Virus record (IMG/VR): IMGVR_UViG_3300010885_025649
Location: 148,498 to 212,497 of that record
Length of the DNA: 64,000 nt
Strand: one strand, 5' to 3'
Both the position numbers and the translations under genes were made by a program. This document shows positions 2,784-45,086 of this stretch, piece after piece; within the stretch, counting starts at the first letter, position 1, and each line of letters starts with the position of its first letter. The notes beneath the pieces are model-generated. The model did not search any database, was not told the DNA's origin, and saw nothing but the letters and a program-made list of their open reading frames with translations.

Positions 2784-2849
2784 GAAACTTCGGGTCGGTA
2801 CTAATAAAAGGGTCGGTAGACCCTAGGGAAACTAGGATAATCTACCGAC
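2784..2849 (-). promoter_or_regulatory. junction J1: terminator hairpin (CCTAG-GGAAA-CTAGG family) plus motif, second variant motif
   Basis: GTCGGTAGA..TCTACCGAC immediately after RNAP stop. Confidence 0.7.
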
Positions 2850-5667: not shown

Positions 5668-5705
5668 GAGTTGGTATTCTCCTTACTAGTGATAGCTTAG
5701 TTGAG

Positions 5706-6281
5706 TTACGCAGCCAATTTGACTGCAAACGCAACAAGGCTAGCAAAGGTGTCTTTGGTGACAACCTTTTTAGCTGCAGGCTCCTTCACTTTAGTAGCAG
5801 AAGCTACCGCAGTAAAGAGTGGCACGGCCACCATTTTGATTTGGCGAGCCGCCCAAGCAGCCGCAGATGCAGCTACTTGTTTGCGTGCCACGCTGGCCGC
5901 TACTTGAGCGCGACGGACTTGCGCCCGCGCAGTCAATACCGCCTGAGCCTTGCGGCACAGTTTGGTGAGCTTATTAACCAACTTGGCTACGGTAGCACCC
6001 AGCAAGCGCTGTTGCGCCCACTGGTACATACCTTTAGTAGCCAGGGCTTTAAGCCCCTTGTTAGCCCGGGCCAACACGGCTTTCACCGCATTGGTTGGTA
6101 GGCTCGCCACGTTACCGTGGAAAGCCCCTTGTTCCGCAACTGCAAGGGCAGCACGAAAAGTAACCGATTTGGCCAGAGTGGCCTTAATGCTGGCCGCTTT
6201 AGCGACCTTTAAAGCCGTAGCTGCAGAGCAGCCACGGAAAGCCACCATATAGGCGGCTAAGTTGTTAACTGTGTTTGACAT
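5706..6281 (-). CDS. Ala/Lys-rich basic protein, possibly nucleic-acid binding
   Basis: 191 aa, very few acidic residues; AAGGAG RBS; directly upstream of RNAP gene. Confidence 0.65.
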   Translation of the reverse strand: MSNTVNNLAAYMVAFRGCSAATALKVAKAASIKATLAKSVTFRAALAVAEQGAFHGNVASLPTNAVKAVLARANKGLKALATKGMYQWAQQRLLGATVAKLVNKLTKLCRKAQAVLTARAQVRRAQVAASVARKQVAASAAAWAARQIKMVAVPLFTAVASATKVKEPAAKKVVTKDTFASLVAFAVKLAA

Positions 6282-6342
6282 GGTTTATTCGCTCCTTTAA
6301 AGTAACGGGTTACCACAACCCACACGCCCAGAAGGAGGGGTG

Positions 6343-6356
6343 CAAATAAAAAGTCG
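6343..6356 (-). promoter_or_regulatory. junction J2: motif without hairpin
   Basis: CGACTTTTTATTTG upstream of the basic protein/RNAP pair. Confidence 0.65.
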
Positions 6357-6388
6357 GTAACCAAAAGGAGCAACCACATACACAATAA

Positions 6389-6487
6389 CTATTGAAGCTT
6401 ATACTTGGGTCGTTCTAAGGGGCCGACCAAACCTCCACGGTCAACAGCAATCACCAAACCGAGCTCAACACTGCTAACAACAGTCAT
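6389..6487 (-). CDS. 32-aa small protein
   Basis: AAGGAGG then MTVVSSVELGLVIAVDRGGLVGPLERPKYKLQ*; translated by hand. Confidence 0.45.
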   Translation of the reverse strand: MTVVSSVELGLVIAVDRGGLVGPLERPKYKLQ

Positions 6488-6547
6488 GTCTAATCCTCCT
6501 TCAAGAATAGGCAGAGAGAAGGCTCCCTGCCTACAAGTTAAAGGAGT

Positions 6548-6844
6548 TTATTTGGCAACAAATTCCCTGCAACCTCTATCTACACTGTGCGGATTAACCG
6601 CACACGACAACGCGGAGCTAAAGCTGTAATACTTACAGCCATAACAAGGCCTTAAAGCCTTTACAATCTCCCAGTCTTCCTCCGAACAGTAGCCTGAGGC
6701 TAGAAAGAAACTAACCTCCTGCTCCGCATACTCAGCTTGACGCTCTTCCTCTTGAGCACAGAGAAGGGCAAGGGCATCAGCCATAATCTCCCCTTGAGAT
6801 TGATCTTTGATTCCCTGTGCTTCAGCGTGTGTGTAGTAACCCAT
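6548..6844 (-). CDS. protein with C-terminal CxxC..CAVNP..C domain (DUF6464-like)
   Basis: CYGCKYYSFSSALSCAVNPHSVDRGCREF. Confidence 0.65.
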   Translation of the reverse strand: MGYYTHAEAQGIKDQSQGEIMADALALLCAQEEERQAEYAEQEVSFFLASGYCSEEDWEIVKALRPCYGCKYYSFSSALSCAVNPHSVDRGCREFVAK

Positions 6845-6877
6845 GGTGCATCTCCATTACGCCACAAATCGAGGTGG

Positions 6878-6948
6878 CTAAATAAAGAGTCGGTATATAC
6901 AGAAAGAAAGTCGTTAACTCCTAGGGAAACTAGGATAAGTTAACGACT
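6878..6948 (-). promoter_or_regulatory. junction J3: hairpin plus tandem motifs
   Basis: AGTCGTTAACT-CCTAGGGAAACTAGG-ATA-AGTTAACGACT. Confidence 0.75.
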
Positions 6949-6955
6949 AGATTAA

Positions 6956-7261
6956 TTAAGCGGTGTAATAGTCAACTACAACCAAATTGCCTTTCAAGAA
7001 GGCAACAAGATCATAGTACTCGCCTTTATTAACATAAATCAAAACCTTCTTAGCCCCAAGAGCCAAGAAAGCTTGAAGCATTTCGCATGCGGTTGCATGT
7101 GAGAGGTTTTTGAACTTGGTGCGATTAGCACCAGTGTTGTAATCTTGCTTAGCCGCACGGAAGCGATTATGCTTGAGGACTAGCACTTGGCGATCCTCCA
7201 CCTCTGAAAACGAGATGCAAAAGGTCAACGCTGGGGTGATAACATTATGTTCTTGTAACAT
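6956..7261 (-). CDS. hypothetical protein
   Basis: ATG at 7261 after GGAGAG; the longer ORF-track start runs through the leader repeat. Confidence 0.65.
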   Translation of the reverse strand: MLQEHNVITPALTFCISFSEVEDRQVLVLKHNRFRAAKQDYNTGANRTKFKNLSHATACEMLQAFLALGAKKVLIYVNKGEYYDLVAFLKGNLVVVDYYTA

Positions 7262-7300
7262 GTGTCTCTCCAATAAGCCGCCTTTAAAAGAGGGCGAACT

Positions 7301-7329
7301 CAAATAAAGAGTCGGGGTTTCCCCCGACT
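7301..7329 (-). promoter_or_regulatory. junction J4: short hairpin plus motif
   Basis: CAAATAAAG-AGTCGGGG-TTTC-CCCCGACT. Confidence 0.75.
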
Positions 7330-7336
7330 TGTTTAT

Positions 7337-7504
7337 TTAGATCTTACCATTCTTAAGAATGGCCTCCTCCCATTCTTGCATAGCCATCCCGAAGACGATC
7401 TCCTGATCATCTTCAGGCGCAGCAGCGGCTGCTGCATATGCTTTGCACACTAGCATAAATAACAACCACTGCTGAGCAGTGGGAGTTACACAATAAACTC
7501 TCAT
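7337..7504 (-). CDS. 55-aa small protein
   Basis: GGAGAG then MRVYCVTPTAQQWLLFMLVCK...NGKI*; translated by hand. Confidence 0.6.
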   Translation of the reverse strand: MRVYCVTPTAQQWLLFMLVCKAYAAAAAAPEDDQEIVFGMAMQEWEEAILKNGKI

Positions 7505-7541
7505 GTTCTCTCCAATAAGCCACCTTTAAAAGAGGGTAGCT

Positions 7542-7555
7542 CAAATAAAGAGTCG
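7542..7555 (-). promoter_or_regulatory. junction J5: motif without hairpin
   Basis: CGACTCTTTATTTG. Confidence 0.65.
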
Positions 7556-7597
7556 CGTTATCACACACAATAATTATGGAACTCTATACTTGGGTCG

Positions 7598-7675
7598 TTA
7601 TAGGTAGGCAACAGCCACACCAACGCTAGCGTTAACCAAACTAAACATGTAACAACTAATCAAAAGCCTGCTCAT
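7598..7675 (-). CDS. 25-aa hydrophobic peptide
   Basis: GGAGG then MSRLLISCYMFSLVNASVGVAVAYL*. Confidence 0.4.
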   Translation of the reverse strand: MSRLLISCYMFSLVNASVGVAVAYL

Positions 7676-7728
7676 GATTAACCCTCCAAAGTAAGTGGGA
7701 GGAAGGCCCCCCACTTTAGACAGGTTAA

Positions 7729-7872
7729 TTATTTCTTAGCTGCGGCAGCTTCTTCATCACGCTCATCTTGAAGCCATTGCTCCCAGTAAGCATCCATCTG
7801 GAGCTTATGAATCCACAGATTCCAAGCCAGTGTGTGGTTCACCAACTTGACAATCATCTTCACTTTAGTCAT
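7729..7872 (-). CDS. 47-aa small protein
   Basis: GGAGAG then MTKVKMIVKLVNHTLAWNLW...AAAAKK*. Confidence 0.6.
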   Translation of the reverse strand: MTKVKMIVKLVNHTLAWNLWIHKLQMDAYWEQWLQDERDEEAAAAKK

Positions 7873-7910
7873 GGTACTCTCCAATGACTCACCTTTAAAA
7901 GAGGGCAAGT

Positions 7911-7940
7911 CAAAGAAAAGGTCGGGATTTCTCCCAACCT
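7911..7940 (-). promoter_or_regulatory. junction J6
   Basis: CAAAGAAA-AGGTCGGGA-TTTC-TCCCAACCT. Confidence 0.7.
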
Positions 7941-7949
7941 TTTAATCAA

Positions 7950-8372
7950 TTAAACAGTGTAATCACGGCACAAAGTGCCAAACCCTAGGGGGTTTACAGT
8001 ACACGGAAGCCGCCACTCCCCGGTGGCGTATTTACACGCCTCACAGGGATTAGGTTCCTGTTCCGCACACCAACGGTTGTAAGCTTCTACCGCATCTGGC
8101 TCAAGCTGTTCATCTTGAGCAAGGTGGTAGGCCTCCCGGCGCTCTTGCTCCGTCAGCTCCCGCGGGTCTAACCATGCGTCATAAGCGGGAGAGTTCTCCC
8201 AAAGACACATAGCGATTTCTTCCCGAATCGCCCGTTGGCGATCAGTGAGCAGACGAGTTGGAACTCCGACCCAAGGATCTTGCAGCACAGACTGCTTAGC
8301 AGCCCAGCGCTCAAAATCCCAGTGGTTTTGGTTGACCAAAACGATCTTGGTAGCCTGAGTAACTTTAAACAT
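7950..8372 (-). CDS. protein with C-terminal CxxC..CTVNP..C domain (DUF6464-like)
   Basis: CEACKYATGEWRLPCTVNPLGFGTLCRDYTV; start MFKVT after AAGGAG. Confidence 0.7.
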   Translation of the reverse strand: MFKVTQATKIVLVNQNHWDFERWAAKQSVLQDPWVGVPTRLLTDRQRAIREEIAMCLWENSPAYDAWLDPRELTEQERREAYHLAQDEQLEPDAVEAYNRWCAEQEPNPCEACKYATGEWRLPCTVNPLGFGTLCRDYTV

Positions 8373-8396
8373 TTGCGCTCCTTTAATAGTGGAGGA

Positions 8397-8472
8397 CAAA
8401 TAAAGAGTCGATAATACTTATCCTAGAAAAGAAGTCGGCAATCCCTAGAGAAACTAGGATAGATTGCCAACT
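8397..8472 (-). promoter_or_regulatory. junction J7: hairpin plus tandem motifs
   Basis: AGTCGGCAATC-CCTAGAGAAACTAGG-ATA-GATTGCCAACT. Confidence 0.75.
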
Positions 8473-8476
8473 CAAA

Positions 8477-8989
8477 TTACCACTTCATGGTAGCCTTAGA
8501 CCAGCCATCCGGAGCTGCATCTAATACTTCCATCAGATCTCCCGCCAGGTGGTAGCTAGCAGGAGAGGGCTTTCCAGAAGGCAAGGTCAGCTTCTGAGGC
8601 TCTTCAGCCTCGAAGTCAACCTGAAGAAATAAACGCACCATTGCATCTATTCCTATAGCTTTGGAAAGCCGAAAGGGAGGTAAGTTGCCCCGGTACGAAA
8701 CCGGCGATAGCGTCACGTCAACGCCAATCACACGATTCTCATACTGAAAGACCACATCAGCACCGTATACCCAATCCAGAATGGACCGGGCAGAACAGGT
8801 GTTGATAGGTCTCCCAATGATCCCCTCCAAGCTTTTCAGCTTACGAACACCTAAGAACCGCTGAGCGGTAGCTAGAAGTTCGACTTCGCTTGGACGAGGC
8901 CATGAGGCAAAGGTAGAGGGATGCAGCTCAATCAAACGAATGAACTGCAACTCAACTACCTTAGGATCGTAATACCCATCTTGGGACAT
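8477..8989 (-). CDS. hypothetical protein, possible PD-(D/E)XK nuclease fold
   Basis: LDWVYGADVVFQYENRVIGVDVT; start MSQDG after GAGG. Confidence 0.5.
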   Translation of the reverse strand: MSQDGYYDPKVVELQFIRLIELHPSTFASWPRPSEVELLATAQRFLGVRKLKSLEGIIGRPINTCSARSILDWVYGADVVFQYENRVIGVDVTLSPVSYRGNLPPFRLSKAIGIDAMVRLFLQVDFEAEEPQKLTLPSGKPSPASYHLAGDLMEVLDAAPDGWSKATMKW

Positions 8990-9067
8990 ACGAGTTCCTC
9001 TTGTATTGTGCCAACTCTTGGACGACCACACCAAGAGTAAGAACTACTGACACAGGATTGTAGGACT

Positions 9068-9116
9068 CAGAAAGAAAGTCGCTAACTTCTAGGGAAACTA
9101 GAATAGGTTAGCGACT
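9068..9116 (-). promoter_or_regulatory. junction J8
   Basis: AGTCGCTAAC-TTCTAGGGAAACTAGAA-TAG-GTTAGCGACT; compensatory change in the inner stem. Confidence 0.75.
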
Positions 9117-9122
9117 AATTAA

Positions 9123-9377
9123 TTACGCGTAGTAACGGCAGGAGCTGCCATTAGCACGGGCGGTACGGCCCGCACGATCAAACTTGACGCGGCTTTTGCC
9201 GTCACGGTTGTTTTTGCTACGGCTAAAGCAGGAACGGCAAGCGCTGGGATTACCCCAGAACCCGCCGTCAAACTTGGCATCGCCTGCCAAGAAGGTTCCG
9301 GAAGCAACGTAATAAAAGAAGGTGTTACCACCTTTCCCGTATACGTAGCTTTCCTCATCGTGAGTAACTTTAAACAT
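9123..9377 (-). CDS. 84-aa basic hypothetical protein
   Basis: start MFKVT after AAGGAG; leader nearly identical to that of 7950..8372. Confidence 0.65.
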   Translation of the reverse strand: MFKVTHDEESYVYGKGGNTFFYYVASGTFLAGDAKFDGGFWGNPSACRSCFSRSKNNRDGKSRVKFDRAGRTARANGSSCRYYA

Positions 9378-9401
9378 TTGCACTCCTTTAATAGTGGAGA
9401 A

Positions 9402-9455
9402 CAAATAAATAGTCGATATATACAGAAAAGAAGTCGAGGGAAGGCCCCTCAACTT
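9402..9455 (-). promoter_or_regulatory. junction J9: hairpin plus tandem motifs
   Basis: AAGTCGAGGG-AAGGC-CCCTCAACTT. Confidence 0.75.
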
Positions 9456-9461
9456 CATTAA

Positions 9462-10034
9462 TTAACGTTTACGCGCCGCCCGAAGGTGGAATACAAAACG
9501 ACTGGGTAAACGATAGCGTTCTGTAAGCGGATCACTCAGGACTGAGATCAGAAGATCCCAATCCCTCTTGGGTAGGGAAGCCACCTTAGGCATTATATCA
9601 AATAACACCCCTGCATCACAAACCCTCCATCTATACCTGATGAAGTTCAGATCTCCATCAAGAAGGTATTCTCTACGCAGGCAAGGTTTTACCTTACCAT
9701 TGTAGTAAACAGAGATTACTCCTCCATCCCGGCGAATGCCAAAGTATGCATTTCTCATTTGTATGAGAATGTATACTAAAGCATTAATTAGCATAAAGTG
9801 CGCATGCACTCGCCCATTATACTTGAAGGGAACTTTAGGCCCCACATCAAATATAATGTCAACATCTGGAAGAAACCCATAGTGGCAGGCTTCCCAAGCC
9901 GTGGCCACCCCGGAGATGGGGAGCCACACCAACACATCCCCTGTAGACAGGGTTACTGTCCGAGTGATTTCAAAATCAAAGGGACACGAAATAAACTGAG
10001 CATACTGCTCATTTGAAAGCATGTAGTGTTTCAT
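9462..10034 (-). CDS. hypothetical protein, paralogue of 11175..11813
   Basis: shared FDF.I/V..V..T.G.V....P and KR..D.LI..LS.P...LRAARK. Confidence 0.65.
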   Translation of the reverse strand: MKHYMLSNEQYAQFISCPFDFEITRTVTLSTGDVLVWLPISGVATAWEACHYGFLPDVDIIFDVGPKVPFKYNGRVHAHFMLINALVYILIQMRNAYFGIRRDGGVISVYYNGKVKPCLRREYLLDGDLNFIRYRWRVCDAGVLFDIMPKVASLPKRDWDLLISVLSDPLTERYRLPSRFVFHLRAARKR

Positions 10035-10097
10035 GGCTTTTTAAACTCCCTTTAGAGTACAGGTAACCACACCTGGAGTCCACAAAAGGGATGAACT

Positions 10098-10144
10098 CAG
10101 AAAAGAAGTCGTAGCTAGCCCCATCATGGCGTTCAGCTACGACT
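10098..10144 (-). promoter_or_regulatory. junction J10
   Basis: CAGAAAAGA-AGTCGTAGCT..AGCTACGACT. Confidence 0.7.
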
Positions 10145-10234
10145 ATCTTAGATATACTCTCTCCTATGCGGTTATTGCAGTAGTACGAGAGCTTCTGTTC
10201 CCAGGCTTATTCAGCCCGATGTATAGAGAAACTC

Positions 10235-10429
10235 TTAGCGGATGTAGATCCGTTTCTGAGTTTTCTCTACTGTGCAAGTTGCGCTATTAAACGCAGGATC
10301 GCACAGGGTATACAACAGTTGATATTCTTGGCGAACATCTTTGTACTGTGTATTACCTACATACACACTATATCCTTGGTACATGACCAAGTGGATAAGT
10401 GTGCTTAGAGAGATTAGTAATGGGTGCAT
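10235..10429 (-). CDS. hypothetical protein
   Basis: 64 aa, GGAG upstream, long structured leader. Confidence 0.55.
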   Translation of the reverse strand: MHPLLISLSTLIHLVMYQGYSVYVGNTQYKDVRQEYQLLYTLCDPAFNSATCTVEKTQKRIYIR

Positions 10430-10545
10430 TACTAACTCCGTAAGTCCCTCCGAGTAACGTCCTTAGGGGTCTACGTATCCGCTATTAATTCTCTTCGACA
10501 AGAGAACCACAGGTTAAACCCGGAGTTGACGGATAAAGTGCAACT

Positions 10546-10594
10546 CAAATAAAGAGTCGGAACTTCCTAGGGAAACTAGGATAAAGCTCCGACT
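10546..10594 (-). promoter_or_regulatory. junction J11
   Basis: AGTCGGAACTT-CCTAGGGAAACTAGG-ATA-AAGCTCCGACT. Confidence 0.75.
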
Positions 10595-10601
10595 ATATCA
10601 C

Positions 10602-11057
10602 TTAAACTGTGTAGTCACGACACCCCTGCCCAAAGGCCAGGGGATTTACGCCACAAGGGAGGAGAGCCTCCCCTGTGGCGTATACACAGCCCTTGCAAAG
10701 GTTTTCCGACTCCGGATATGCCGGTGGCGGACTATATAATTGGTATGCCGGGTGAAGGGCAATATTGCCCTCAAATACCGGTGGCAGATCTTGCCACCGG
10801 TCCTCCCACACCCATACCGTTATGTGACATGCCCAGAAGGGCAGTAACGGTATGGCACCGTCTGCATCCTGCACAGGCAGGATGACCATATAATTATTAA
10901 ATTGCGGATCCTGATAGTGGATCCGAACGCGGGGAGTTTCCCTCGCCTCAATCTTAGCCGTGCTAAGATTAAGGTTGGCTTGGGCTTTCGCCCGTTTTGC
11001 TGCATACGCAGCGTATCCGGGAAACGTAGCCAATGTAGCCAGGTTGGTACGTGCCAT
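10602..11057 (-). CDS. protein with C-terminal CxxC..CGVNP..C domain (DUF6464-like)
   Basis: CKGCVYATGEALLPCGVNPLAFGQGCRDYTV; start MARTN after GGAGAG. Confidence 0.7.
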   Translation of the reverse strand: MARTNLATLATFPGYAAYAAKRAKAQANLNLSTAKIEARETPRVRIHYQDPQFNNYMVILPVQDADGAIPLLPFWACHITVWVWEDRWQDLPPVFEGNIALHPAYQLYSPPPAYPESENLCKGCVYATGEALLPCGVNPLAFGQGCRDYTV

Positions 11058-11095
11058 GTGTCTCTCCAATAAGCCGCCTTTAAAAGAGGGCAGCT

Positions 11096-11171
11096 CAAAT
11101 AAAGAGTCGATAATACTTATCCTAGAAAAGAAGTCGGAACTTCCTAGGGAAACTAGGATAAAGCTCCGACT
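11096..11171 (-). promoter_or_regulatory. junction J12: hairpin plus tandem motifs
   Basis: hairpin identical to J11, spacer identical to J7 and J13. Confidence 0.75.
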
Positions 11172-11174
11172 TAG

Positions 11175-11813
11175 TTATGCTTTACGAGCAGCACGAAGGC
11201 GCGCCACTAAATCTTTAGGCACTTGACGACAAGGACCAGACAAGATACCTATCAAGGTATCATACTCTCGCTTTGAAAACGCGTCCATCCCAGCGATTAG
11301 CCAGGACTCTCCATCGGGACGTTCAACCCTCCAACCGGTGTTAACCGGCACTGGGGACCAAGTCCACCAGCTACCATGAGGTAAGGTAGACTTATGCAGC
11401 AAGGCATAAATCTTGTTACCCCGCTCTAAGTAAAGCGTGTTTCCACTAATTTCTAGCCTCAAACTAAACCTGACCAAGATCTTGATCACCGTGGCAAGGT
11501 GCCACTTATATACGTAAAGCTTAACATTGTAGCGGTTAATCTCCGGTGGCTCAACGGGAGCCAACATTACTGCGGCTACCCAAAGGAGGCAGCGCACCGC
11601 TGCTGGAGGGCAACTTACACCCTCCGCATAGTACGAGCCAGGGGCTAGACACCCCGGAATTTGTGATACCTGTAGGAGAGCGGTATAGCCCTCCTTGGGA
11701 ATGAGTAGAATAACTCGACCCATGGTTGTGGGCACGACGGCCCTCACATTAAAGTCAAACATCCCGGTCAGGATGGACGAAACTTTTTCTTCGGTCACGT
11801 TTACTTTAAACAT
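11175..11813 (-). CDS. hypothetical protein, paralogue of 9462..10034
   Basis: 212 aa, ends LRAARKA. Confidence 0.65.
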   Translation of the reverse strand: MFKVNVTEEKVSSILTGMFDFNVRAVVPTTMGRVILLIPKEGYTALLQVSQIPGCLAPGSYYAEGVSCPPAAVRCLLWVAAVMLAPVEPPEINRYNVKLYVYKWHLATVIKILVRFSLRLEISGNTLYLERGNKIYALLHKSTLPHGSWWTWSPVPVNTGWRVERPDGESWLIAGMDAFSKREYDTLIGILSGPCRQVPKDLVARLRAARKA

Positions 11814-11854
11814 CTTGATGTCTCCAATAAGCCGCCTTTAAAAGAGGGCGAACT

Positions 11855-11920
11855 CAAATAAAGAGTCGATAATACTTATCCTAGAAAAACTGTCGAATGT
11901 AGTGCTAGTACATCCGACAG
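11855..11920 (-). promoter_or_regulatory. junction J13: hairpin plus tandem motifs
   Basis: CTGTCGAATGTA..TACATCCGACAG. Confidence 0.7.
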
Positions 11921-11976
11921 CTTGGTGGTCAGTTATTTAGATTGTCTATCCTCGCAGACCTACGAGGGTTAATTGG

Positions 11977-12420
11977 TTACGGGCTATCCGCGCATAAATC
12001 TTCAATGATGCTTAATACATCATCAAAGTCCTGTGCAGGAAATACAACCCCTAACGAAGTGATGACAGCCCAATTAAAGCCATCATGTTCGTAGAAGCCG
12101 TACACACCCAACTTAAATGTGCCGATAACGACATCTAAGCTAAGTGGTTCCACCACAGGAGGTGCCACAGAATAACCCATAAGTACCTGTCCCCAGATGC
12201 CCAGGTCCGTGGCATAACCCTGAATAGCAGGATTAAGCCCATCGCCATAGGCCCAGTGCAGATGCAGGTCTTCAATAACCTCATGAACGGTAATACGAGT
12301 ACCATCCTTGAAGGCCTTGAATCCCCACACCTCACCTTGTGGGTTATAGATTTGCTCAACAGTAATGTTAAGCTCCTCTACAACCCCAACTGGTGGCAGG
12401 AAGAAATGGAGTTTATCCAT
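11977..12420 (-). CDS. hypothetical protein
   Basis: start MDKLH after AAAGGAG. Confidence 0.65.
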   Translation of the reverse strand: MDKLHFFLPPVGVVEELNITVEQIYNPQGEVWGFKAFKDGTRITVHEVIEDLHLHWAYGDGLNPAIQGYATDLGIWGQVLMGYSVAPPVVEPLSLDVVIGTFKLGVYGFYEHDGFNWAVITSLGVVFPAQDFDDVLSIIEDLCADSP

Positions 12421-12484
12421 GTTCTCCTTTCTCCCGCGTGCAGATAACCAGCTAGTTATCCTACGTCTTATGGAGTTCAATCAA

Positions 12485-12558
12485 CAAATAAAGAGTCGAT
12501 AATAATTAATCTAGAAAAGAAGTCGCTAACCCCTAGAGACTAGGATAAGTTAGCGACT
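12485..12558 (-). promoter_or_regulatory. junction J14: hairpin plus tandem motifs
   Basis: AGTCGCTAACC-CCTAGAGACTAGG-ATA-AGTTAGCGACT. Confidence 0.75.
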
Positions 12559-12564
12559 TAACTT

Positions 12565-12639
12565 TTAGAAGCTAAAGTACGCGATGATCATCGCTATAAT
12601 AGCGATGAACAAAGAACCTTCAGCAATCTTCTTCAACAC
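12565..12639 (-). CDS. 24-aa single-TM peptide
   Basis: TAAGGAGGTGA then MLKKIAEGSLFIAIIAMIIAYFSF*, occupying its own cassette. Confidence 0.6.
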   Translation of the reverse strand: MLKKIAEGSLFIAIIAMIIAYFSF

Positions 12640-12664
12640 AGAAATCACCTCCTTAGGTGTGTAC

Positions 12665-12696
12665 CTAAAGAAGAGGTCGGGGTATTCCCCCGACCT
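12665..12696 (-). promoter_or_regulatory. junction J15
   Basis: AGGTCGGGG-TATTC-CCCCGACCT. Confidence 0.7.
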
Positions 12697-12700
12697 ACTA

Positions 12701-13249
12701 TTAATCTTTACTAAACGTTAAGACACCTCCAGTATCAAGGTAGATACGAAGGATTTCCCAATCGCTTTTATACGATAGGTGTGGAAGGAGTTTTTGAAGA
12801 TCTCCTTTCATACCCATACGTATAAGCAAATCTGGGGTTTGGAGCCACGAACTCCAGTTGAGTTGGTTTGTGCAGTGACTAAACCAATCATTATCTAAAT
12901 TGCCCGTACGAGCAAGTTGACTGATTTGGGAATCAGTCAAGGTGTAAAACTTCTTATCCCGCGCTTTAAGCGGGACAATGAGTTTCCCGGGTAGAGCATT
13001 AGGCCCCACCTGTGCAGCAACTCTCTGCTGTACCCGGATCTCCCCTAAAGGAGTGCCCACGATTCCCCACCAAAGATGGAACAAATCATGAACAGAAGGT
13101 ACTGCTGCCCCCTGTTCAATGTACCACTGACAAAGGGAACCCCCCCCTTGTAGTCTAAATAACTTTATGGGACATTGTTGCTCCGCGTCATCAACGCGGA
13201 TAAACAATAGCGAGCCCATCCGGTGACCACTCTTCTTAGATAATCCCAT
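12701..13249 (-). CDS. hypothetical protein
   Basis: 182 aa ORF, GGAGAGG upstream. Confidence 0.65.
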   Translation of the reverse strand: MGLSKKSGHRMGSLLFIRVDDAEQQCPIKLFRLQGGGSLCQWYIEQGAAVPSVHDLFHLWWGIVGTPLGEIRVQQRVAAQVGPNALPGKLIVPLKARDKKFYTLTDSQISQLARTGNLDNDWFSHCTNQLNWSSWLQTPDLLIRMGMKGDLQKLLPHLSYKSDWEILRIYLDTGGVLTFSKD

Positions 13250-13294
13250 GATCCTCTCCCTGGAGTACCTCTACGAAATTGTAGAGCAGTAGTC

Positions 13295-13333
13295 CAAGAA
13301 AAAGAGTCGGAGGTTGCTAGCCTCCAACTCTTT
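13295..13333 (-). promoter_or_regulatory. junction J16
   Basis: AAAGAGTCGGAGG..CCTCCAACTCTTT. Confidence 0.7.
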
Positions 13334-13339
13334 ATTTAC

Positions 13340-13744
13340 TTATTGCGGTGGGAATTCAAAGAACTCCACGATGGTAGTCAACGGGAGGTGCACCCATTTA
13401 GAGTAATGCACCTCCGTTAACATAACATTTGACGCATAGGGCAGGGTGCCCTCAGTCATGGAGAGTGTAATATGAGGGTGCGTGTTATCGCACACCTCCT
13501 GGATCTCCTCAGGAAGGAGAACTGACAGGGCTTGCACCCTATCATCGTGGTGTGACAGCATAGCTGTCACAATAAGCTGCTGACCAAGCAGGTGTTGATA
13601 GCCGACGCTATCAACCCCGAACTTGAGCGTGCAATGGAAGTGTTTAGCTTCCACTGGAAACTCGAAGTTCACAGCAGCTTTGACTGCTGCGATGGCCTCA
13701 GCAGTCAAAGAAAGCCAAAGAATTCCCTTTGCCATGTCATTCAC
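13340..13744 (-). CDS. 2H phosphoesterase
   Basis: two HxT motifs: FHCTLKF and PHITLS, followed by G..P.ASN.ML; start may be ATG at 13735. Confidence 0.75.
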   Translation of the reverse strand: MNDMAKGILWLSLTAEAIAAVKAAVNFEFPVEAKHFHCTLKFGVDSVGYQHLLGQQLIVTAMLSHHDDRVQALSVLLPEEIQEVCDNTHPHITLSMTEGTLPYASNVMLTEVHYSKWVHLPLTTIVEFFEFPPQ

Positions 13745-13766
13745 CTGGGGTGTGAAAGATTTGCCC

Positions 13767-13814
13767 CAGAAAAGAAGTCGGTAATCCCTAGAGAAACTAG
13801 GATAGATTACCGAC
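13767..13814 (-). promoter_or_regulatory. junction J17
   Basis: GTCGGTAATC-CCTAGAGAAACTAGG-ATA-GATTACCGAC. Confidence 0.75.
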
Positions 13815-13820
13815 AGCTAG

Positions 13821-14168
13821 CTACAGGTAGACCCTGCAGTTAGTCAGGAGTATAGGATACTCCTCTCTTAACCAATCTCGATCCTCCTCTAAAAGAGGGA
13901 CAGGATCCTCATTATCAATACGATAATGAGTGGCACGATTGCACACCTCATCACCGTTCATTATATCTTCAACAATGTAACCATCTAAGGTTACAAACTC
14001 ACTGTTAAACATGGAGCAAAGCTCCTGTGTAATATAGCTCTTACTCCTAAAAGGAGTAATGGGGCCTAAGTCCCCATTGTTAATTTGATCTCTCTCGACT
14101 GTATCCCGGGTAACTTTACCCACAGCCAGTAAACAAAACTCATAGGCCTCAGCAGTAAACTTGATCAT
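13821..14168 (-). CDS. hypothetical protein
   Basis: 115 aa, AAGGAGG RBS. Confidence 0.7.
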   Translation of the reverse strand: MIKFTAEAYEFCLLAVGKVTRDTVERDQINNGDLGPITPFRSKSYITQELCSMFNSEFVTLDGYIVEDIMNGDEVCNRATHYRIDNEDPVPLLEEDRDWLREEYPILLTNCRVYL

Positions 14169-14223
14169 GGTGAACCTCCTTGACAGAGAGGGGAACCACC
14201 CCGAGATCTTTAATAGAGGATCT

Positions 14224-14273
14224 CAGAAAAAGAGTCGAAGACTATAAGAGGAGGCTCTTACAATCTTCGACTC
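14224..14273 (-). promoter_or_regulatory. junction J18
   Basis: GAGTCGAAGA..TAAGAG-GAGG-CTCTTA..TCTTCGACTC. Confidence 0.7.
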
Positions 14274-14276
14274 CAG

Positions 14277-14615
14277 TTAGGCATCATAAACAAGGGTATT
14301 ACCCCCAGCTTTCTGAAAGCCTAAACTTAAGAAGGCCAAGCTCCGATGCTCAGCCAAGCCATCCCCCTCATAAGGAATGGCCATTACTTCAACCCCAGCC
14401 AAGGGGCCAGCGGTCCATTGGCTGAAGGTACGACAAAGCCATCGTACAATCCGGACTTTCGTCCTAACTTCAGCACTAACAATAGTATAACTATTATTAA
14501 TGCTAAAGCTAATAGACCCCGAGCTTGCAGTCCCACGGAACTCAAGCTCAACGGCAACCCCATCAATTAGGGTTACCGCTTTGATAATGTCTAGTTCCAT
14601 ATTAGAAACTATCAC
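14277..14615 (-). CDS. hypothetical protein, paralogue of 14914..15306
   Basis: AIPYEGDGLAEHRSLAFLSLGF; start uncertain, no SD seen. Confidence 0.6.
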   Translation of the reverse strand: MIVSNMELDIIKAVTLIDGVAVELEFRGTASSGSISFSINNSYTIVSAEVRTKVRIVRWLCRTFSQWTAGPLAGVEVMAIPYEGDGLAEHRSLAFLSLGFQKAGGNTLVYDA

Positions 14616-14617
14616 AA

Positions 14618-14647
14618 CAGAAAAAGAGTCGAGGCAGTTGCCCCGAC
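14618..14647 (-). promoter_or_regulatory. junction J19
   Basis: CAGAAAAAGA-GTCGAGGC-AGTT-GCCCCGAC. Confidence 0.7.
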
Positions 14648-14691
14648 ATCTTAGTTAGAATTTCTTACCCGCGCTAACTACGCGGACACCC

Positions 14692-14847
14692 CTAAAGTCC
14701 AGCCCCAAGCTGGTCTAGGGTGATGAACCCTAGCCTCCAAGCTTGAAGCCAACAGTTGGAAGGGGTGCACTCCTCAACTGTTGTGAACATCTTCACTACC
14801 AACTGGCGCTCAGCATCAGTCAGTAACAAAGCTAACTGTGGGCACAT
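14692..14847 (-). CDS. 51-aa small protein
   Basis: TAAGGAGGTGA then MCPQLALLLTDAERQ...GAGL*. Confidence 0.6.
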   Translation of the reverse strand: MCPQLALLLTDAERQLVVKMFTTVEECTPSNCWLQAWRLGFITLDQLGAGL

Positions 14848-14876
14848 AAAGAATCACCTCCTTAAGGTTATGCTCA

Positions 14877-14915
14877 CAGAAAAGAAGTCGAAGGGAAGGC
14901 CCTCCAACTTCTTTT
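14877..14915 (-). promoter_or_regulatory. junction J20
   Basis: AAGAAGTCGAAGGG-AAGG-CCCTCCAACTTCTT. Confidence 0.7.
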
Positions 14916-15306
14916 AGGTGATAAGAAAATAACTATCACCATACTCGGCAAAGCCGAGTGAATCAAGAAATTTGCAGCGGACACTGTGATGGCCATCACC
15001 ATCACAGGGAAACGCGCAAACAATGGTGTTTGCGGGGAGACCCGCGATGTGTGCTTTTACAGCACGGTACGCGGTACGGACCGCGCTTGTTGGGACGACG
15101 CTGTGGTTAGCAGCATTGTAACCAACGGAGCCATTAACATCTGCATCGAGGACGATGCAGCTGACGTAATCATCACCGAAGAAGTCTTCGGTGACGAAGA
15201 AGTTGACGCTAAGCGCGCCAACGGTGATATCAGCATTGAAGCTGACATCAACAGGAGTATTAGATACTCCTGCTTTGAGATTAGTAAGTTGGCGAATGGT
15301 ATTCAT
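14914..15306 (-). CDS. hypothetical protein, paralogue of 14277..14615
   Basis: AFPCDGDGHHSVRCKFLDSLGF; AAGGAGG RBS. Confidence 0.65.
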   Translation of the reverse strand: MNTIRQLTNLKAGVSNTPVDVSFNADITVGALSVNFFVTEDFFGDDYVSCIVLDADVNGSVGYNAANHSVVPTSAVRTAYRAVKAHIAGLPANTIVCAFPCDGDGHHSVRCKFLDSLGFAEYGDSYFLIT

Positions 15307-15341
15307 TCCCCCCCTCCTTCTGTTACCCAGATTAGGTAACT

Positions 15342-15411
15342 CAAATAAAAAGTCGGAGGATACAGAAAGAAAGTCGTTAACTCCTAGGGAAACTAGGATA
15401 AGTTAACGACT
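15342..15411 (-). promoter_or_regulatory. junction J21: hairpin plus tandem motifs
   Basis: hairpin identical to J3. Confidence 0.75.
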
Positions 15412-15417
15412 AGTCAC

Positions 15418-15540
15418 TTAAGGGCAGCGATAAACGATGCAGATGGCTGCATCGAGAGTAGCCAAATACAGGGCTAATCCAACGTTGACAAGAATCGCGG
15501 CGAGGGCCGCGATTAAAATATCCAATGCGTATTTGCGCAT
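15418..15540 (-). CDS. 40-aa membrane peptide
   Basis: AAGGAG then MRKYALDILIAALAAILVNVGLALYLATLDAAICIVYRCP*. Confidence 0.6.
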   Translation of the reverse strand: MRKYALDILIAALAAILVNVGLALYLATLDAAICIVYRCP

Positions 15541-15571
15541 GGTGTCTCCTTGTTACCCAGATTAGGTAACT

Positions 15572-15627
15572 CAAATAAAAAGTCGGTATATACAGAAAAG
15601 AAGTCGGTAACCAAGGGGTTACCGACT
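15572..15627 (-). promoter_or_regulatory. junction J22: hairpin plus tandem motifs
   Basis: AGTCGGTAACC-AAGG-GGTTACCGACT. Confidence 0.75.
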
Positions 15628-15633
15628 ATGAGA

Positions 15634-15840
15634 TTAGAATCCAAGGGCGCTAAGGCCATCTTGGATTGTCTTGAGTCTAGTTGGGGTGGTACGATACCCC
15701 CCTGCTAGACAGACAAGATGAAAATATAAATCTGGGTTTTTTGTACAAAACGGATTTGCCGAGTATACGGTATCCACCGAAGGGGTGAACACGGAAACGG
15801 AAACGGAAACAATCAAAACAAAACGGATTAACTTTGACAT
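15634..15840 (-). CDS. small protein with possible signal peptide
   Basis: MSKLIRFVLIVSVSVSVFTP; TAAGGAG RBS; first gene of the array. Confidence 0.6.
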   Translation of the reverse strand: MSKLIRFVLIVSVSVSVFTPSVDTVYSANPFCTKNPDLYFHLVCLAGGYRTTPTRLKTIQDGLSALGF

Positions 15841-15863
15841 TTGAACTCCTTAATAGTGGAGGA

Positions 15864-15877
15864 CAAATAAAGAGTCG
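15864..15877 (-). promoter_or_regulatory. junction J23: first motif of the array, no hairpin
   Basis: CGACTCTTTATTTG with no upstream co-oriented gene. Confidence 0.7.
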
Positions 15878-16063
15878 AGGCACAGAGGCTCCCAGTGTCA
15901 AGGGTATGAGCTAAAAAATCTAGACGAAAACACATATATGCCGGGGGGGTATAGCAAGTACATATATGGCCTATTCAGAAAATTTCTAATTTTTTGGTGG
16001 GAAGTCGGAATTTCCCGATTCGAATCTGATATGGTTAGAAAGTATACACCGGAGAGTTGCCTT

Positions 16064-16807
16064 ATGCCATTTTTAAATACCCTAATCGGATTCCTATCCG
16101 AGAATACTAACGGTGGGGTTATTGTAGATGTAACTCAGAAAGATTCACCAATAATCTACGTGAACAAAGCTTTTGAAGAACTTACAGGATATAGCGCTAC
16201 AGAAGTAATAGGAAAGAACTGCAGATTTTTACAAGGCGGCGACAAGAATCAAGTCGGCATTCTACAATTAGGATTAGCGATTAACCAAGGAATAGGCTGT
16301 AAAGTATTGCTCCGCAATTATAGAAAAGACGGCTTAATGTTTTGGAATGATTTAGCAATCACGCCAATCAAAGATGACGAAGGAAAGGTAAAATATTATA
16401 TAGGAATTCAATCCGATATAAGTGCAAGATTAGAAGGAACAAGAAGTTCTCAGGATACTTTAATCAAGTTCACTAAACTGGACATGGAGTTATTACAGAT
16501 CCAAAGAGACATAAGTAATCTATTAAAGATTGTACAGATTGGAAATGGTAACCCGAGTTTAATTCGTAGAGTGGACAAAGTGGAAACAAGATTAGATGAC
16601 GTGCAAAAAGATATCTCTGAGTTAAAAGCTTTATATATAAGTGAAAGTGAATCTATCAGAGATACTTTAGGAACAATAGTAGAGAACACGCAGACTAATA
16701 AGGGCACAACCAGTGCAGCAATAATTACAGCAATAGCCACAACAATCATAGGATTACTAACTATTTTTGGTCCTCAATTAGTAACCTTATTACATTTAGT
16801 TAAGTAA
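16064..16807 (+). CDS. LOV (PAS) flavin photoreceptor domain + coiled coil + C-terminal TM helix
   Basis: PIIYVNKAFEELTGY..GKNCRFLQG (16211-16237)..NYRKDG..FWN..YYIGIQSD; GGAG precedes ATG at 16064 (ORF track start 15938). Confidence 0.85.
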   Translation: MPFLNTLIGFLSENTNGGVIVDVTQKDSPIIYVNKAFEELTGYSATEVIGKNCRFLQGGDKNQVGILQLGLAINQGIGCKVLLRNYRKDGLMFWNDLAITPIKDDEGKVKYYIGIQSDISARLEGTRSSQDTLIKFTKLDMELLQIQRDISNLLKIVQIGNGNPSLIRRVDKVETRLDDVQKDISELKALYISESESIRDTLGTIVENTQTNKGTTSAAIITAIATTIIGLLTIFGPQLVTLLHLVK

Positions 16808-26383: not shown

Positions 26384-26499
26384 ATAGTTAACTAACAACT
26401 TACTATACTATATAGCAAAAGTATGGTAATATCTAAGGATGCGCAGATTACACAAGGCGCAGGTACTAAAATAAAACTAGTTTACAACGGACACACAAA

Positions 26500-44983: not shown

Positions 44984-44990
44984 TTTAACC

Positions 44991-45086
44991 TTATTCTGGA
45001 CTCAATCCTACTTCATCTGCTCGTGTGGCGGGGTCACTATTGACACCCTCAAAAAGTACATCTAGAACCAAGGGAAAGAAGCATGA
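44991..45086 (+). pseudogene. tnpA: tnpA C-terminal remnant with nonsense codon
   Basis: LFWTQSYFICSCGGVTIDTLKKYI*NQGKEA*; overlaps tnpB start as ATGA. Confidence 0.8.

What the first reader, a model, noticed from the sequence alone, without database searches (positions are those of the whole stretch)
6343..15877. Leader and hairpin families are combinatorially reassorted, suggesting cassette shuffling at the motif
Seen: leader family GAGTTCGCCCTCTTTTAAAGGCGGCTTATTGGAGA occurs at J4, J5, J6, J12, J13; TCCTCCACTATTAA(A)GGAG at J7, J9, J23; GAGTTACCTAATCTGGGTAAC at J21, J22; TAAGGAGGTGATT at J15, J20. Hairpin families (CCTAG-loop-CTAGG in 9 copies, GAAGGC-loop, short G/C) do not track the leader families. 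J3 and J21 share an identical hairpin with different leaders, as do J11 and J12. Established analogue: PeSL promoter stem-loop cassettes of T4-type phages. Inference: recombination in the shared core inserts, deletes and reorders genes. No recombinase is visible in the window.
Basis: partly seen in the sequence, partly recalled or inferred. Interest (0 to 1): 0.62.

Follow-up and report, generated by a model that had tools for sequence, protein, structure and literature searches.

The report
Modular gene junctions beside phage RNA polymerase
A freshwater jumbo phage carries a run of about 24 small orphan genes whose junctions are mosaics of reusable hairpin, 14-base and leader modules, ending at a phage-encoded RNA polymerase gene; the modules have clearly been swapped between junctions, but no copy of the phage shows genes being moved.

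Summary
All 24 junctions of a minus-strand array (window 5668-15937) are built from a few module families. Hairpin and leader families combine as if at random. Several 34-48-nt blocks are 100% identical next to unrelated modules.

The 14-nt CGACT-pyrimidine element occurs only in this array in the 212-kb genome.

The array lies in a roughly 29-kb GC-rich island (about 48% GC against 36.7% overall). It ends at a 935-aa gene that folds like two-barrel RNA polymerases (QDE-1, crAss phi14:2 gp66, P23-45-type gp64). Two short contigs that carry distant homologues of that polymerase have the same hairpin-CGACTC-T-tract grammar. The shared element is therefore most likely a transcription signal, not primarily a recombination site.

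Exchange of modules between junctions is shown by the mosaic pattern. Insertion, deletion or reordering of genes is not shown. Three assemblies and fragments from two further runs are colinear, and the array is base-for-base identical in all of them. No informative relatives exist.

The system is like the T4-type promoter-stem-loop cassettes (PeSLs) in layout and evolutionary logic. It is not a PeSL, because it has no sigma-70 promoter.

The parts
5668..15937 (-). Array of about 24 small genes (g1 15840-15634 through g24 6281-5706; 25-212 aa) with junctions IG1-IG24. Every gene has a Shine-Dalgarno sequence (SD) and a start codon.
   Evidence: Almost all are orphans in Pfam, PHROGs and the 5.8-billion-protein search.
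15841..15937 (-). IG1: C-type element 15864-15877 with no strong hairpin, then leader L2. This is the start of the array and the right edge of the GC-rich island.
15541..15633 (-). IG2: unique hairpin, T-type tail, spacer GTATATAC, C-type element 15572-15585, leader L3.
15307..15417 (-). IG3: CCTAG hairpin 15372-15411 (identical to that of IG22), T-type tail, spacer, C-type element 15342-15355, leader L3.
14848..14913 (-). IG4: GGCCTTCC-loop hairpin, T-type element 14877-14890, leader L4.
12421..12564 (-). IG10: CCTAG hairpin 12521-12558, T-type tail, AT-rich spacer, C-type element 12485-12498, unique long leader.
11814..11976 (-). IG11: unique hairpin, T tail, spacer AGGATAAGTATTAT, C-type element 11855-11868, leader L1 (48/48 identical to IG21).
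11058..11174 (-). IG12: CCTAG hairpin 11132-11171 (40/40 with IG13), T-type element, the same spacer, C-type element 11096-11109, leader L1.
10430..10601 (-). IG13: the same CCTAG hairpin 10555-10594 fused directly to C-type element 10546-10559, then a unique 116-nt leader. Gene g12 (10602-11057) is therefore flanked by 40-nt identical direct repeats.
9378..9461 (-). IG15: GGCCTTCC-loop hairpin, T-type element, spacer GTATATAT, C-type element 9402-9415, leader L2. Homology with IG17 runs 16 nt into the coding sequence (MFKVT).
8373..8476 (-). IG17: CCTAG hairpin 8433-8472 (40/41 with IG7), T-type element, spacer AGGATAAGTATTAT, C-type element 8397-8410, leader L2.
7262..7597 (-). IG20 (C-type element 7542-7555, no hairpin, leader L1), gene g20, and IG21 (short GC hairpin fused to C-type element 7301-7314, leader L1).
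6845..6955 (-). IG22: CCTAG hairpin 6909-6948, T tail, spacer GTATATAC, C-type element 6879-6892, unique leader.
6282..6388 (-). IG24: C-type element 6343-6356 with no hairpin. An upstream GCTCCTTT stretch is complementary to the SD AAAGGAGC of g24.
2860..5667 (-). 935-aa two-barrel single-subunit RNA polymerase (GDFDGD at residues 584-589). It is the last gene of the array, and the g24-g25 junction has no hairpin.
2805..2846 (-). Ninth CCTAG hairpin with a CCGACCCTTTTATTAG tail, directly after the polymerase gene.
16832..26398 (-). 3188-aa ORF on the same strand upstream of the array. It carries NRAAGRRGVQ...GDYDGD, a motif like that of the beta-prime catalytic barrel. It is a candidate virion RNA polymerase on motif evidence only.
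   Evidence: No support.
13340..13735 (-). g7: weak 2H-phosphoesterase (Acb1 / LigT-like) cassette gene with two HxT motifs.

Best explanation
The span is the upstream two-thirds of a probable early or host-takeover gene array of an uncultured freshwater jumbo myophage. About 24 small orphan genes sit on one strand inside a roughly 29-kb GC-rich island. The array ends at a phage-encoded two-barrel RNA polymerase gene.

Each junction is assembled from independent functional modules:
1. A T-type element. This is an RNA or DNA hairpin with a conserved AGTCG/CGACT base and a C/T-rich tail, and it looks like a terminator.
2. A C-type element, CGACTnTTTATTTG, present in 13 junctions. It needs no hairpin and always lies immediately 5' of the leader. 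In the 8 double junctions it always comes after the T-type element. I take it to be the promoter, or another recognition signal, of a phage RNA polymerase.
3. A leader hairpin followed by a Shine-Dalgarno sequence (SD).

Shown: the anatomy, the hairpin covariation, the confinement of the elements to the array, the mosaic pattern, the polymerase fold, and conservation of the T-type grammar in distant relatives.

Inferred: the modules are conserved mainly because they are transcription and translation signals. Because they are repeated, homologous recombination or gene conversion has copied them between junctions and produced the mosaics. The same repeats could delete or insert genes in the way T4-type promoter-stem-loop cassettes (PeSLs) do, but no such event has been observed.
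For: - Element statistics and confinement to the array.
- Junction anatomy. T-type elements always follow a hairpin. Ten of 13 C-type elements have none.
- Terminator-like sites: 40 against 10.6 expected.
- CCTAG hairpin: 99% of cells paired, 5 pairs with compensatory changes, 0 of 500 shuffles as good.
- L1 consensus fold pairs the core CTCTTTA with the SD TGGAGAG.
- Mosaic blocks of 34-48 nt at 100% identity, with repeats confined to junctions.
- Independence of hairpin and leader families.
- GC-rich island.
- The 935-aa protein: invariant D-x-DGD. All 8 sequence hits to solved structures fall on the catalytic barrel of the beta-prime / Rpb1 subunit. Foldseek top hits are QDE-1 (1.5e-7), phi14:2 gp66 (1.4e-6) and P32 gp64 (3.2e-6). 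ESM Atlas feature hits point to phage RdRP-family clusters.
- Relatives L078 and L077, which carry polymerase homologues, have hairpin-CGACTC-T-tract-leader junctions, including a GGGGCCTTCCCC-loop hairpin.
- Precedent: phage P23-45 has 14 conserved promoters for its virion polymerase, a conserved 26-nt terminator motif, and its non-virion polymerase gene among the pre-early genes.
Against: - No RNA data exist, so transcript starts and ends are unknown.
- The C-type element is only 14 nt long and U-rich, so it could be a terminator tail or a processing site.
- In IG13 and IG21 it directly follows a hairpin.
- The polymerase that would read the array before the 935-aa enzyme is made is not identified. 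The 3188-aa candidate rests on a motif alone.
- The pairing between the element and the SD is largely an effect of base composition. SD accessibility is 0.22 with the element, 0.30 with a shuffled element and 0.53 without it.
- The distant relatives show only T-type elements in the few kilobases available.
Confidence: 0.6

Rival explanations
1. The junctions are mobile regulatory cassettes like the T4-type promoter-stem-loop cassettes (PeSLs). Ongoing recombination in the shared core excises, inserts and reorders single genes, possibly through mini-circles. This is the main reason the modules are shared.
For: - Mosaic junctions and four-gamete-type combinations.
- Gene g12 is flanked by 40/40 identical direct repeats. 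Genes g2, g11 and g20 are flanked by 50-68-nt repeats at 90-97% identity.
- The same leader precedes unrelated genes.
- One 165-nt contig from run X2 joins 7266 to 11821 through the 48-nt identical core plus L1 block.
Against: - Three assemblies and fragments from two further runs are identical and colinear across the array.
- Homology boundaries are not confined to the core.
- The X2 joint has depth 2.7 in a sparsely covered run. It is what a k=31 graph produces when the alternative branches are not sampled.
- The element is conserved in distant relatives with unrelated flanking genes, so sharing does not need recent transfer.
- No recombinase was found.
Confidence: 0.3
2. The array is one or a few long transcripts. 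The hairpins and the AU-rich 14-nt element are RNA processing and stability signals (RNase III- or RNase E-type sites, as in the T7 early region), not promoters or terminators.
For: - The junctions are too short for sigma-70 promoters, and none is conserved.
- Long 16-18-bp covarying hairpins have a conserved loop and bulge.
- The element lies single-stranded between two hairpins and can pair with the SD.
- An 8-bp stretch complementary to the SD lies upstream of the element in IG24.
Against: - The element is present in IG1, where no upstream gene needs to be separated.
- CGACT is conserved even where there is no hairpin.
- Hairpins followed by T-tracts fit terminators.
- No RNA data exist either way.
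Confidence: 0.15
3. The hairpins are attC-like or REP-like sites of a site-specific (integron-type or HUH-type) recombination system that captures promoterless cassettes.
For: - A same-orientation array of small ORFs is separated by imperfect palindromes with conserved ends and variable middles.
- A TnpA(Y1) fragment and a TnpB gene exist elsewhere in the window.
Against: - The genome has no tyrosine integrase.
- The Y1 transposase is a 31-residue remnant with a stop codon, 29 kb away.
- Every hairpin is followed by a T-tract on the coding strand.
- Ten C-type elements have no hairpin.
Confidence: 0.03
4. There has been no exchange at all. The module families look alike only because of purifying selection or convergence on the same signals.
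For: The T-type base and tail are conserved across very distant relatives.
Against: Blocks of 34-48 nt are 100% identical. They include the 5-bp stem segment that varies freely, with compensation, in other copies. They abut unrelated modules.
Confidence: 0.03

Closest known systems
PeSL (promoter-early stem-loop) cassettes of T4-type phages (Arbiol et al. 2010, PMC2839356; Comeau et al. 2014, PMC4122927)
   Same: Composite regulatory motifs conserved over 50-110 nt. They lie in intergenic positions of a region rich in small orphan genes, between the stop codon and the ribosome-binding site. They contain a terminator-like stem-loop, and repeated copies offer homology for recombination.
   Different: PeSLs are defined by a strong sigma-70 promoter (-35, -10 and an AT-rich upstream region). 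None is present here. The conserved unit here is a 14-nt CGACT-pyrimidine element plus leader hairpins. The phage is not T4-type on the evidence seen (Mu-like portal). Indels between sister phages and mini-circles, which established the role of PeSLs, are not observed here.
Pre-early/early transcription system of Thermus phage P23-45 (virion polymerase gp96 fused to a giant protein, plus non-virion polymerase gp64; bioRxiv 10.1101/2022.12.01.518664)
   Same: The polymerases are two-barrel RNA polymerases. The gene for the non-virion enzyme lies in the block of first-expressed small genes. A strongly conserved short motif precedes many of those genes, and a conserved terminator motif is specific to that block. 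The 935-aa model matches gp64-type structures (8f72, 8f5m).
   Different: Here the polymerase that reads the array is not identified and no transcript ends have been mapped. The host, phage morphology (contractile tail) and sequences are unrelated. P23-45 is not reported to have modular mosaic junctions or a GC-rich island.
YonO of SPbeta and the crAss-like phi14:2 gp66 virion RNA polymerase (PMC5467207; bioRxiv 10.1101/2020.03.07.982082)
   Same: Single-chain two-barrel RNA polymerases of phages with a D-x-D-G/x-D catalytic motif. gp66 is part of a giant virion protein that transcribes early genes.
   Different: The YonO promoter is unknown, and YonO transcribes one late operon. phi14:2 early transcripts showed no common upstream motif, whereas this array has a very strong one.
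Integron attC cassette arrays
   Same: One-orientation arrays of short ORFs separated by imperfect palindromes with conserved ends.
   Different: There is no integrase and no attI. The hairpins carry T-tract tails and are followed by leaders with ribosome-binding sites. The conserved element also occurs without a hairpin.

Membership tests
PeSL (T4-type promoter-early stem-loop cassette) | Strong sigma-70-type early promoter (-35/-10 with an AT-rich upstream region) inside the motif | tested here: not met
   The consensus scan found 10 sites against 12.7 expected, and only one lies in a junction. Alignment of 21 junctions anchored on the element shows conservation only in the 14-nt element itself.
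PeSL (T4-type promoter-early stem-loop cassette) | Stable stem-loop acting as terminator or attenuator | tested here: met
   Predicted hairpins of -13 to -25 kcal/mol are followed by T-rich tails. Covariation supports the CCTAG hairpin. Function itself was not assayed.
PeSL (T4-type promoter-early stem-loop cassette) | Located between small orphan genes of a hyperplastic region | tested here: met
   There are 24 junctions between genes that have almost no Pfam, PHROG or sequence relatives.
PeSL (T4-type promoter-early stem-loop cassette) | Indels or replacements between closely related phages map to the motifs | tested here: inconclusive
   The only relatives are at least 99.95% identical. They are colinear and have no difference inside the array. 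No moderately diverged relative exists in the collections searched.
PeSL (T4-type promoter-early stem-loop cassette) | Excised mini-circles with one chimeric motif | not testable with these tools
   Only Logan contigs were available, and they break at the repeats.
Two-barrel (QDE-1 / YonO / gp64-type) RNA polymerase, for the 935-aa ORF | Catalytic D-x-D-G-D loop in a beta-prime-like double-psi beta-barrel | tested here: met
   GDFDGD, with D585, D587, G588 and D589 invariant in 7 homologues. The profile aligns to the NADFDGD region of beta-prime / Rpb1 chains in all 8 hits to solved structures.
Two-barrel (QDE-1 / YonO / gp64-type) RNA polymerase, for the 935-aa ORF | Overall fold similar to solved two-barrel polymerases | tested here: met
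   Foldseek probability is 1.00 to QDE-1, phi14:2 gp66, P32 gp64, P74 gp62 and RDR2. Only residues of about 285-610 are modelled with confidence, so TM-scores are low (0.2-0.3).
Two-barrel (QDE-1 / YonO / gp64-type) RNA polymerase, for the 935-aa ORF | DNA-templated RNA synthesis | not testable with these tools
   This needs a biochemical assay.
Virion-delivered giant RNA polymerase (crAss gp66 / P23-45 gp96 type), for the 3188-aa ORF | Recognisable two-barrel polymerase domain | tested here: inconclusive
   Only the motif context NRAAGRRGVQ...GDYDGD supports it. Nothing came from Pfam, PHROGs, tblastn, the solved-structure sequence search, hhalign, the ESM Atlas or the word search. The single-sequence model has pLDDT 35 and is unusable.
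Integron cassette array | Tyrosine integrase (IntI) with attI next to the array | tested here: not met
   PF00589 has no match in the 212-kb record, while all controls were positive.

The most novel reading that the evidence does not exclude
The 14-nt CGACTnTTTATTTG element, with the hairpin-CGACT-T-tract element as its terminator, is the dedicated promoter/terminator code of a previously undescribed lineage of phage two-barrel RNA polymerases. The polymerase would be delivered by the 3188-aa virion protein. The junctions would then form a plug-and-play expression system. Any gene dropped between two junctions is at once transcribed, terminated and translated. That would explain how the GC-rich island collects orphan genes and anti-defence genes by recombination at the signals.
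Probability: 0.3. Interest if true: 0.78.

Novelty: new variant of a known kind. Interest (0 to 1): 0.55.

Why it matters
Promoters and terminators of single-chain two-barrel phage RNA polymerases are almost unknown. The YonO promoter is undefined, and phi14:2 early genes show no common motif. This array offers 13 plus at least 15 copies of short, sharply defined candidate signals next to the polymerase gene, and part of the grammar is conserved in distant relatives. That makes recognition by this enzyme class directly testable.

The array is also a clean natural example of regulatory modules (terminator, recognition element, leader) recombining independently of the genes they serve, in a phage lineage unrelated to T4. 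This extends the idea behind the T4-type PeSL cassettes beyond sigma-70 promoters.

The GC-rich island, with its polymerase genes and an Acb1-like gene, is a candidate self-contained host-takeover module.

Tried and rejected
**Promoters and polymerases**
- Sigma-70 promoters are not enriched, and there is no conserved -35/-10 at any fixed distance.
- Hand comparison with Bacteroidota-type and SPO1-type promoter motifs did not fit consistently.
- PF00940 (T7-like polymerase) has no match, but its control rang nowhere, so this is uninformative.
- PF00562 and PF04542 (cellular-type polymerase subunit and sigma factor) have no match.
- PHROG scans of 20 further large ORFs found replication, ribonucleotide reductase (RNR), RIIA, terminase and HNH genes. 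They found no polymerase or recombinase.

**Recombinases**
- PF00589 (integrase) and PF00154 (RecA) are absent.
- The only Y1 transposase match is a remnant.

**Relatives**
- The phage collection gave no match by megablast or by tblastn with the 3188-aa protein.
- IMG/VR and metagenome pattern scans returned only the same phage, plus single-copy chance hits: L010, L028-L076 and L079-L081.
- The 935-aa protein and g11 have no word-search relatives.
- The exhaustive search found only homologues at 24-35% identity.
- The search for related loci failed with the alignment and found nothing with P0008.
- Cassette proteins are not homologous to genes in L018, L077 or L078.

**Other checks**
- Rfam: nothing. 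tRNAs: none.
- Reads: only contigs were available, and they break at the repeats. The single X2 joint (7266 to 11821) is treated as unresolved, not as evidence. The stretch laid was 6000 letters.
- SD sequestration by the element is mostly a base-composition effect.
- hhalign gave no support for homology between the 935-aa family and the 3188-aa or 1171-aa ORFs.
- The 3188-aa fragment model was too poor to search.
- No genetic code other than table 11 was used.

Full report
**Context.** The window is the last 64 kb of a 212,497-bp IMG/VR virus record, estimated 91% complete. The phage is a jumbo myophage with a Mu-like portal and a tail sheath. It occurs in freshwater metagenomes. The finding's span holds about 24 small genes, all on the minus strand. 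Each has a Shine-Dalgarno sequence (SD) and a start codon. I number the junctions IG1 (15937-15841) to IG24 (6388-6282).

**Observation.**
- The core CGACTCTTTATTTG has 16 matches at up to 2 mismatches, against 0.46 expected.
- Genome-wide, all 13 matches at up to 1 mismatch, and all 25 matches to a looser CGACy-pyrimidine pattern, lie in this array on the minus strand.
- These k-mers are the most repeated strand-specific 11-mers of the genome.
- Eight CCTAG hairpins lie in the span. The ninth is outside it, just after the 935-aa gene at about 2805-2846.
- IG3/IG22 and IG12/IG13 share 40/40 identical hairpins but have different leaders.
- Hairpin and leader families are independent: 1 of 15 same-leader pairs shares a hairpin family, against 2.15 expected.

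**Anatomy.** Anchoring 21 junctions on the element shows that only the 14 nt CGACTyTTTnTyTG are conserved. There is no -35 or -10 box at any fixed distance, and sigma-70-like sites are not enriched. Two classes of element can be told apart.
- T-type: CGACy plus a C/T tail with no A. There are at least 15 copies, and each is the 3' base of a hairpin.
- C-type: CGACTnTTTATTT(G/A). There are 13 copies, and 10 have no adjacent hairpin. The C-type element always lies directly 5' of the leader. In the 8 double junctions the order is always hairpin, T-type, AT-rich spacer, C-type, leader.
- IG1, the head of the array, has a C-type element but no upstream gene to terminate.

Terminator-like sites are four-fold enriched (40 against 10.6). 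The CCTAG hairpin is a selected structure. In it, 99% of cells are paired, 5 pairs show compensatory changes, and 0 of 500 shuffles do as well. Its base, bulge, inner stem and loop are invariant, and a 5-bp middle segment varies freely.

Leaders form hairpins. In L1 the core CTCTTTA pairs with the SD TGGAGAG. This effect is largely due to base composition. No Rfam family matches.

**Mosaicism.** All 48 DNA repeat pairs in the region lie within junctions. The modules of one junction have different nearest relatives. IG12 combines the IG13 hairpin (40/40), the spacer plus core shared with IG11/IG17 (34/34 between those two) and the leader shared with IG11/IG21 (48/48 between those two). IG17 combines the IG7 hairpin (40/41), that same spacer plus core, and leader L2.

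Identity includes the stem segment that varies in other copies. Selection alone therefore cannot explain it, and DNA has been copied between junctions. Borders of homology fall at hairpin/tail, core/leader and leader/coding positions, not only in the core.

Paralogous genes (g3/g5, g11/g14, and the C-terminal domain shared by g12, g17 and g22) do not share leaders or hairpins. The same leader precedes unrelated genes. Gene g12 is bracketed by identical 40-nt direct repeats.

**Is there gene shuffling?** I could not show it.
- The 155-kb IMG/VR contig is 99.956% identical over 22.8 kb. It has no gaps and no difference inside the array.
- A 48.6-kb metagenome contig is 100% identical over 17.6 kb.
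- Contigs from two other runs are identical where they are present.
- One 165-nt, 2.7x contig joins 7266 to 11821 through the 48-nt identical block. A graph artefact in a sparsely covered run explains it equally well.
- No moderately diverged relative exists in any collection searched.

**New context.**
- The array lies in an island of about 29 kb at 44-51% GC, in a genome of 36.7% GC. The right edge of the island is IG1.
- The 935-aa gene that closes the array is a two-barrel RNA polymerase. D585, D587, G588 and D589 are invariant. All sequence hits to solved structures fall on the catalytic barrel of the beta-prime / Rpb1 subunit. ESM Atlas feature hits go to phage RdRP-family clusters. The confident core of the model matches QDE-1, phi14:2 gp66 and P23-45-type gp64.
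- The 3188-aa ORF upstream and a 1171-aa ORF in the island carry motifs like those of the beta-prime barrel. Nothing else supports them.
- Two short contigs that encode homologues of the polymerase at about 25% identity have the same grammar: a hairpin with an AGTyG...CGACTC base, a T-rich tail, a leader hairpin and an SD. One has a GGGGCCTTCCCC-loop hairpin like those of IG4 and IG15. Their other genes are unrelated to the genes of this array.
- The element therefore tracks the polymerase lineage across deep divergence, which is what one expects of a transcription signal.
- P23-45 gives the precedent. It has a conserved promoter motif at 14 pre-early transcript starts, a conserved 26-nt terminator motif, and its non-virion polymerase gene among the pre-early genes.

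**Verdict.** The analogy with T4-type promoter-stem-loop cassettes (PeSLs) is good for layout and evolutionary logic. Membership fails on the defining sigma-70 promoter.

The shared element is best read as a signal of a phage two-barrel RNA polymerase system. Recombination at it is a consequence of its being repeated. Gene-level shuffling remains plausible but unobserved. Promoter, terminator tail and processing site cannot be separated without RNA end mapping.

Noticed in passing
genome ~135,500-164,500 (window up to ~16,000; L026 17,000-19,000; L027): A roughly 29-kb island at 44-51% GC sits in a 36.7% GC genome and has sharp edges. Its genes are mostly on the minus strand. It holds the array, the 935-aa polymerase gene and a 1171-aa ORF with AADFDGDQ. 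It may be a horizontally acquired takeover module or one that is expressed separately.
   Followed up: partly
window 16832-26398 (-) and genome 9473-22201 (+): Two giant ORFs of 3188 and 4242 aa have no database relatives. The first carries NRAAGRRGVQ...GDYDGD, which is like the catalytic barrel of RNA polymerase beta-prime.
   Followed up: partly
window 44979-45071 and 45083-46309 (+): An IS200/IS605-type element lies inside the tail module. It has a complete TnpB (OrfB_IS605 plus a Cas12f-like TNB domain) preceded by a 31-residue TnpA(Y1) remnant that contains a TAG stop.
   Followed up: partly
window 15938-16807 (+): A 289-aa protein has a PAS (LOV-like) domain and a C-terminal part that resembles a holin. 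It is transcribed divergently from the head of the array.
   Followed up: no
window 13340-13735 (-): Cassette gene g7 gives weak hits to 2H phosphoesterases (Acb1 anti-CBASS, LigT, the tRNA-ligase CPD domain) and has two HxT motifs. It is a possible anti-defence gene.
   Followed up: no
window 6389-6547 and 7598-7728 (-): The tiny genes g23 and g19, with their downstream stretches (CGACCCAAGTATA...ATTATTGTGT), are paralogous modules of about 150 nt. Each starts with a GC hairpin that lacks the CGACT base.
   Followed up: no
L027 ~5,330-6,870 (genome ~142.3-143.9 kb): A noncoding stretch of about 1.5 kb in the island has several direct repeats of 18-36 nt and palindromes. It may be an origin or a control region.
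   Followed up: no
L021 6472-12116 and L023 7161-9089: The ribonucleotide reductase and thymidylate synthase ORFs are abnormally long. They have internal hits to HNH, helicase and terminase-like families, which suggests inteins or homing-endonuclease insertions.
   Followed up: no
genome 43654, 58399, 98271, 120913, 123160: A palindromic AT-rich motif, TTACTATTAATAGTAA, recurs at five or more sites in the AT-rich part of the genome. It may be a signal used outside the island.
   Followed up: no
L018 (Logan SRR25991867, 7.8 kb, 41% GC): A contig with the closest polymerase homologue (26% identity) also has small genes, each followed by a canonical GC-stem and T6-8 terminator with a shared CTATTTTTTAGTG-like tail and a leader hairpin. 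The grammar is the same but the motif differs.
   Followed up: partly
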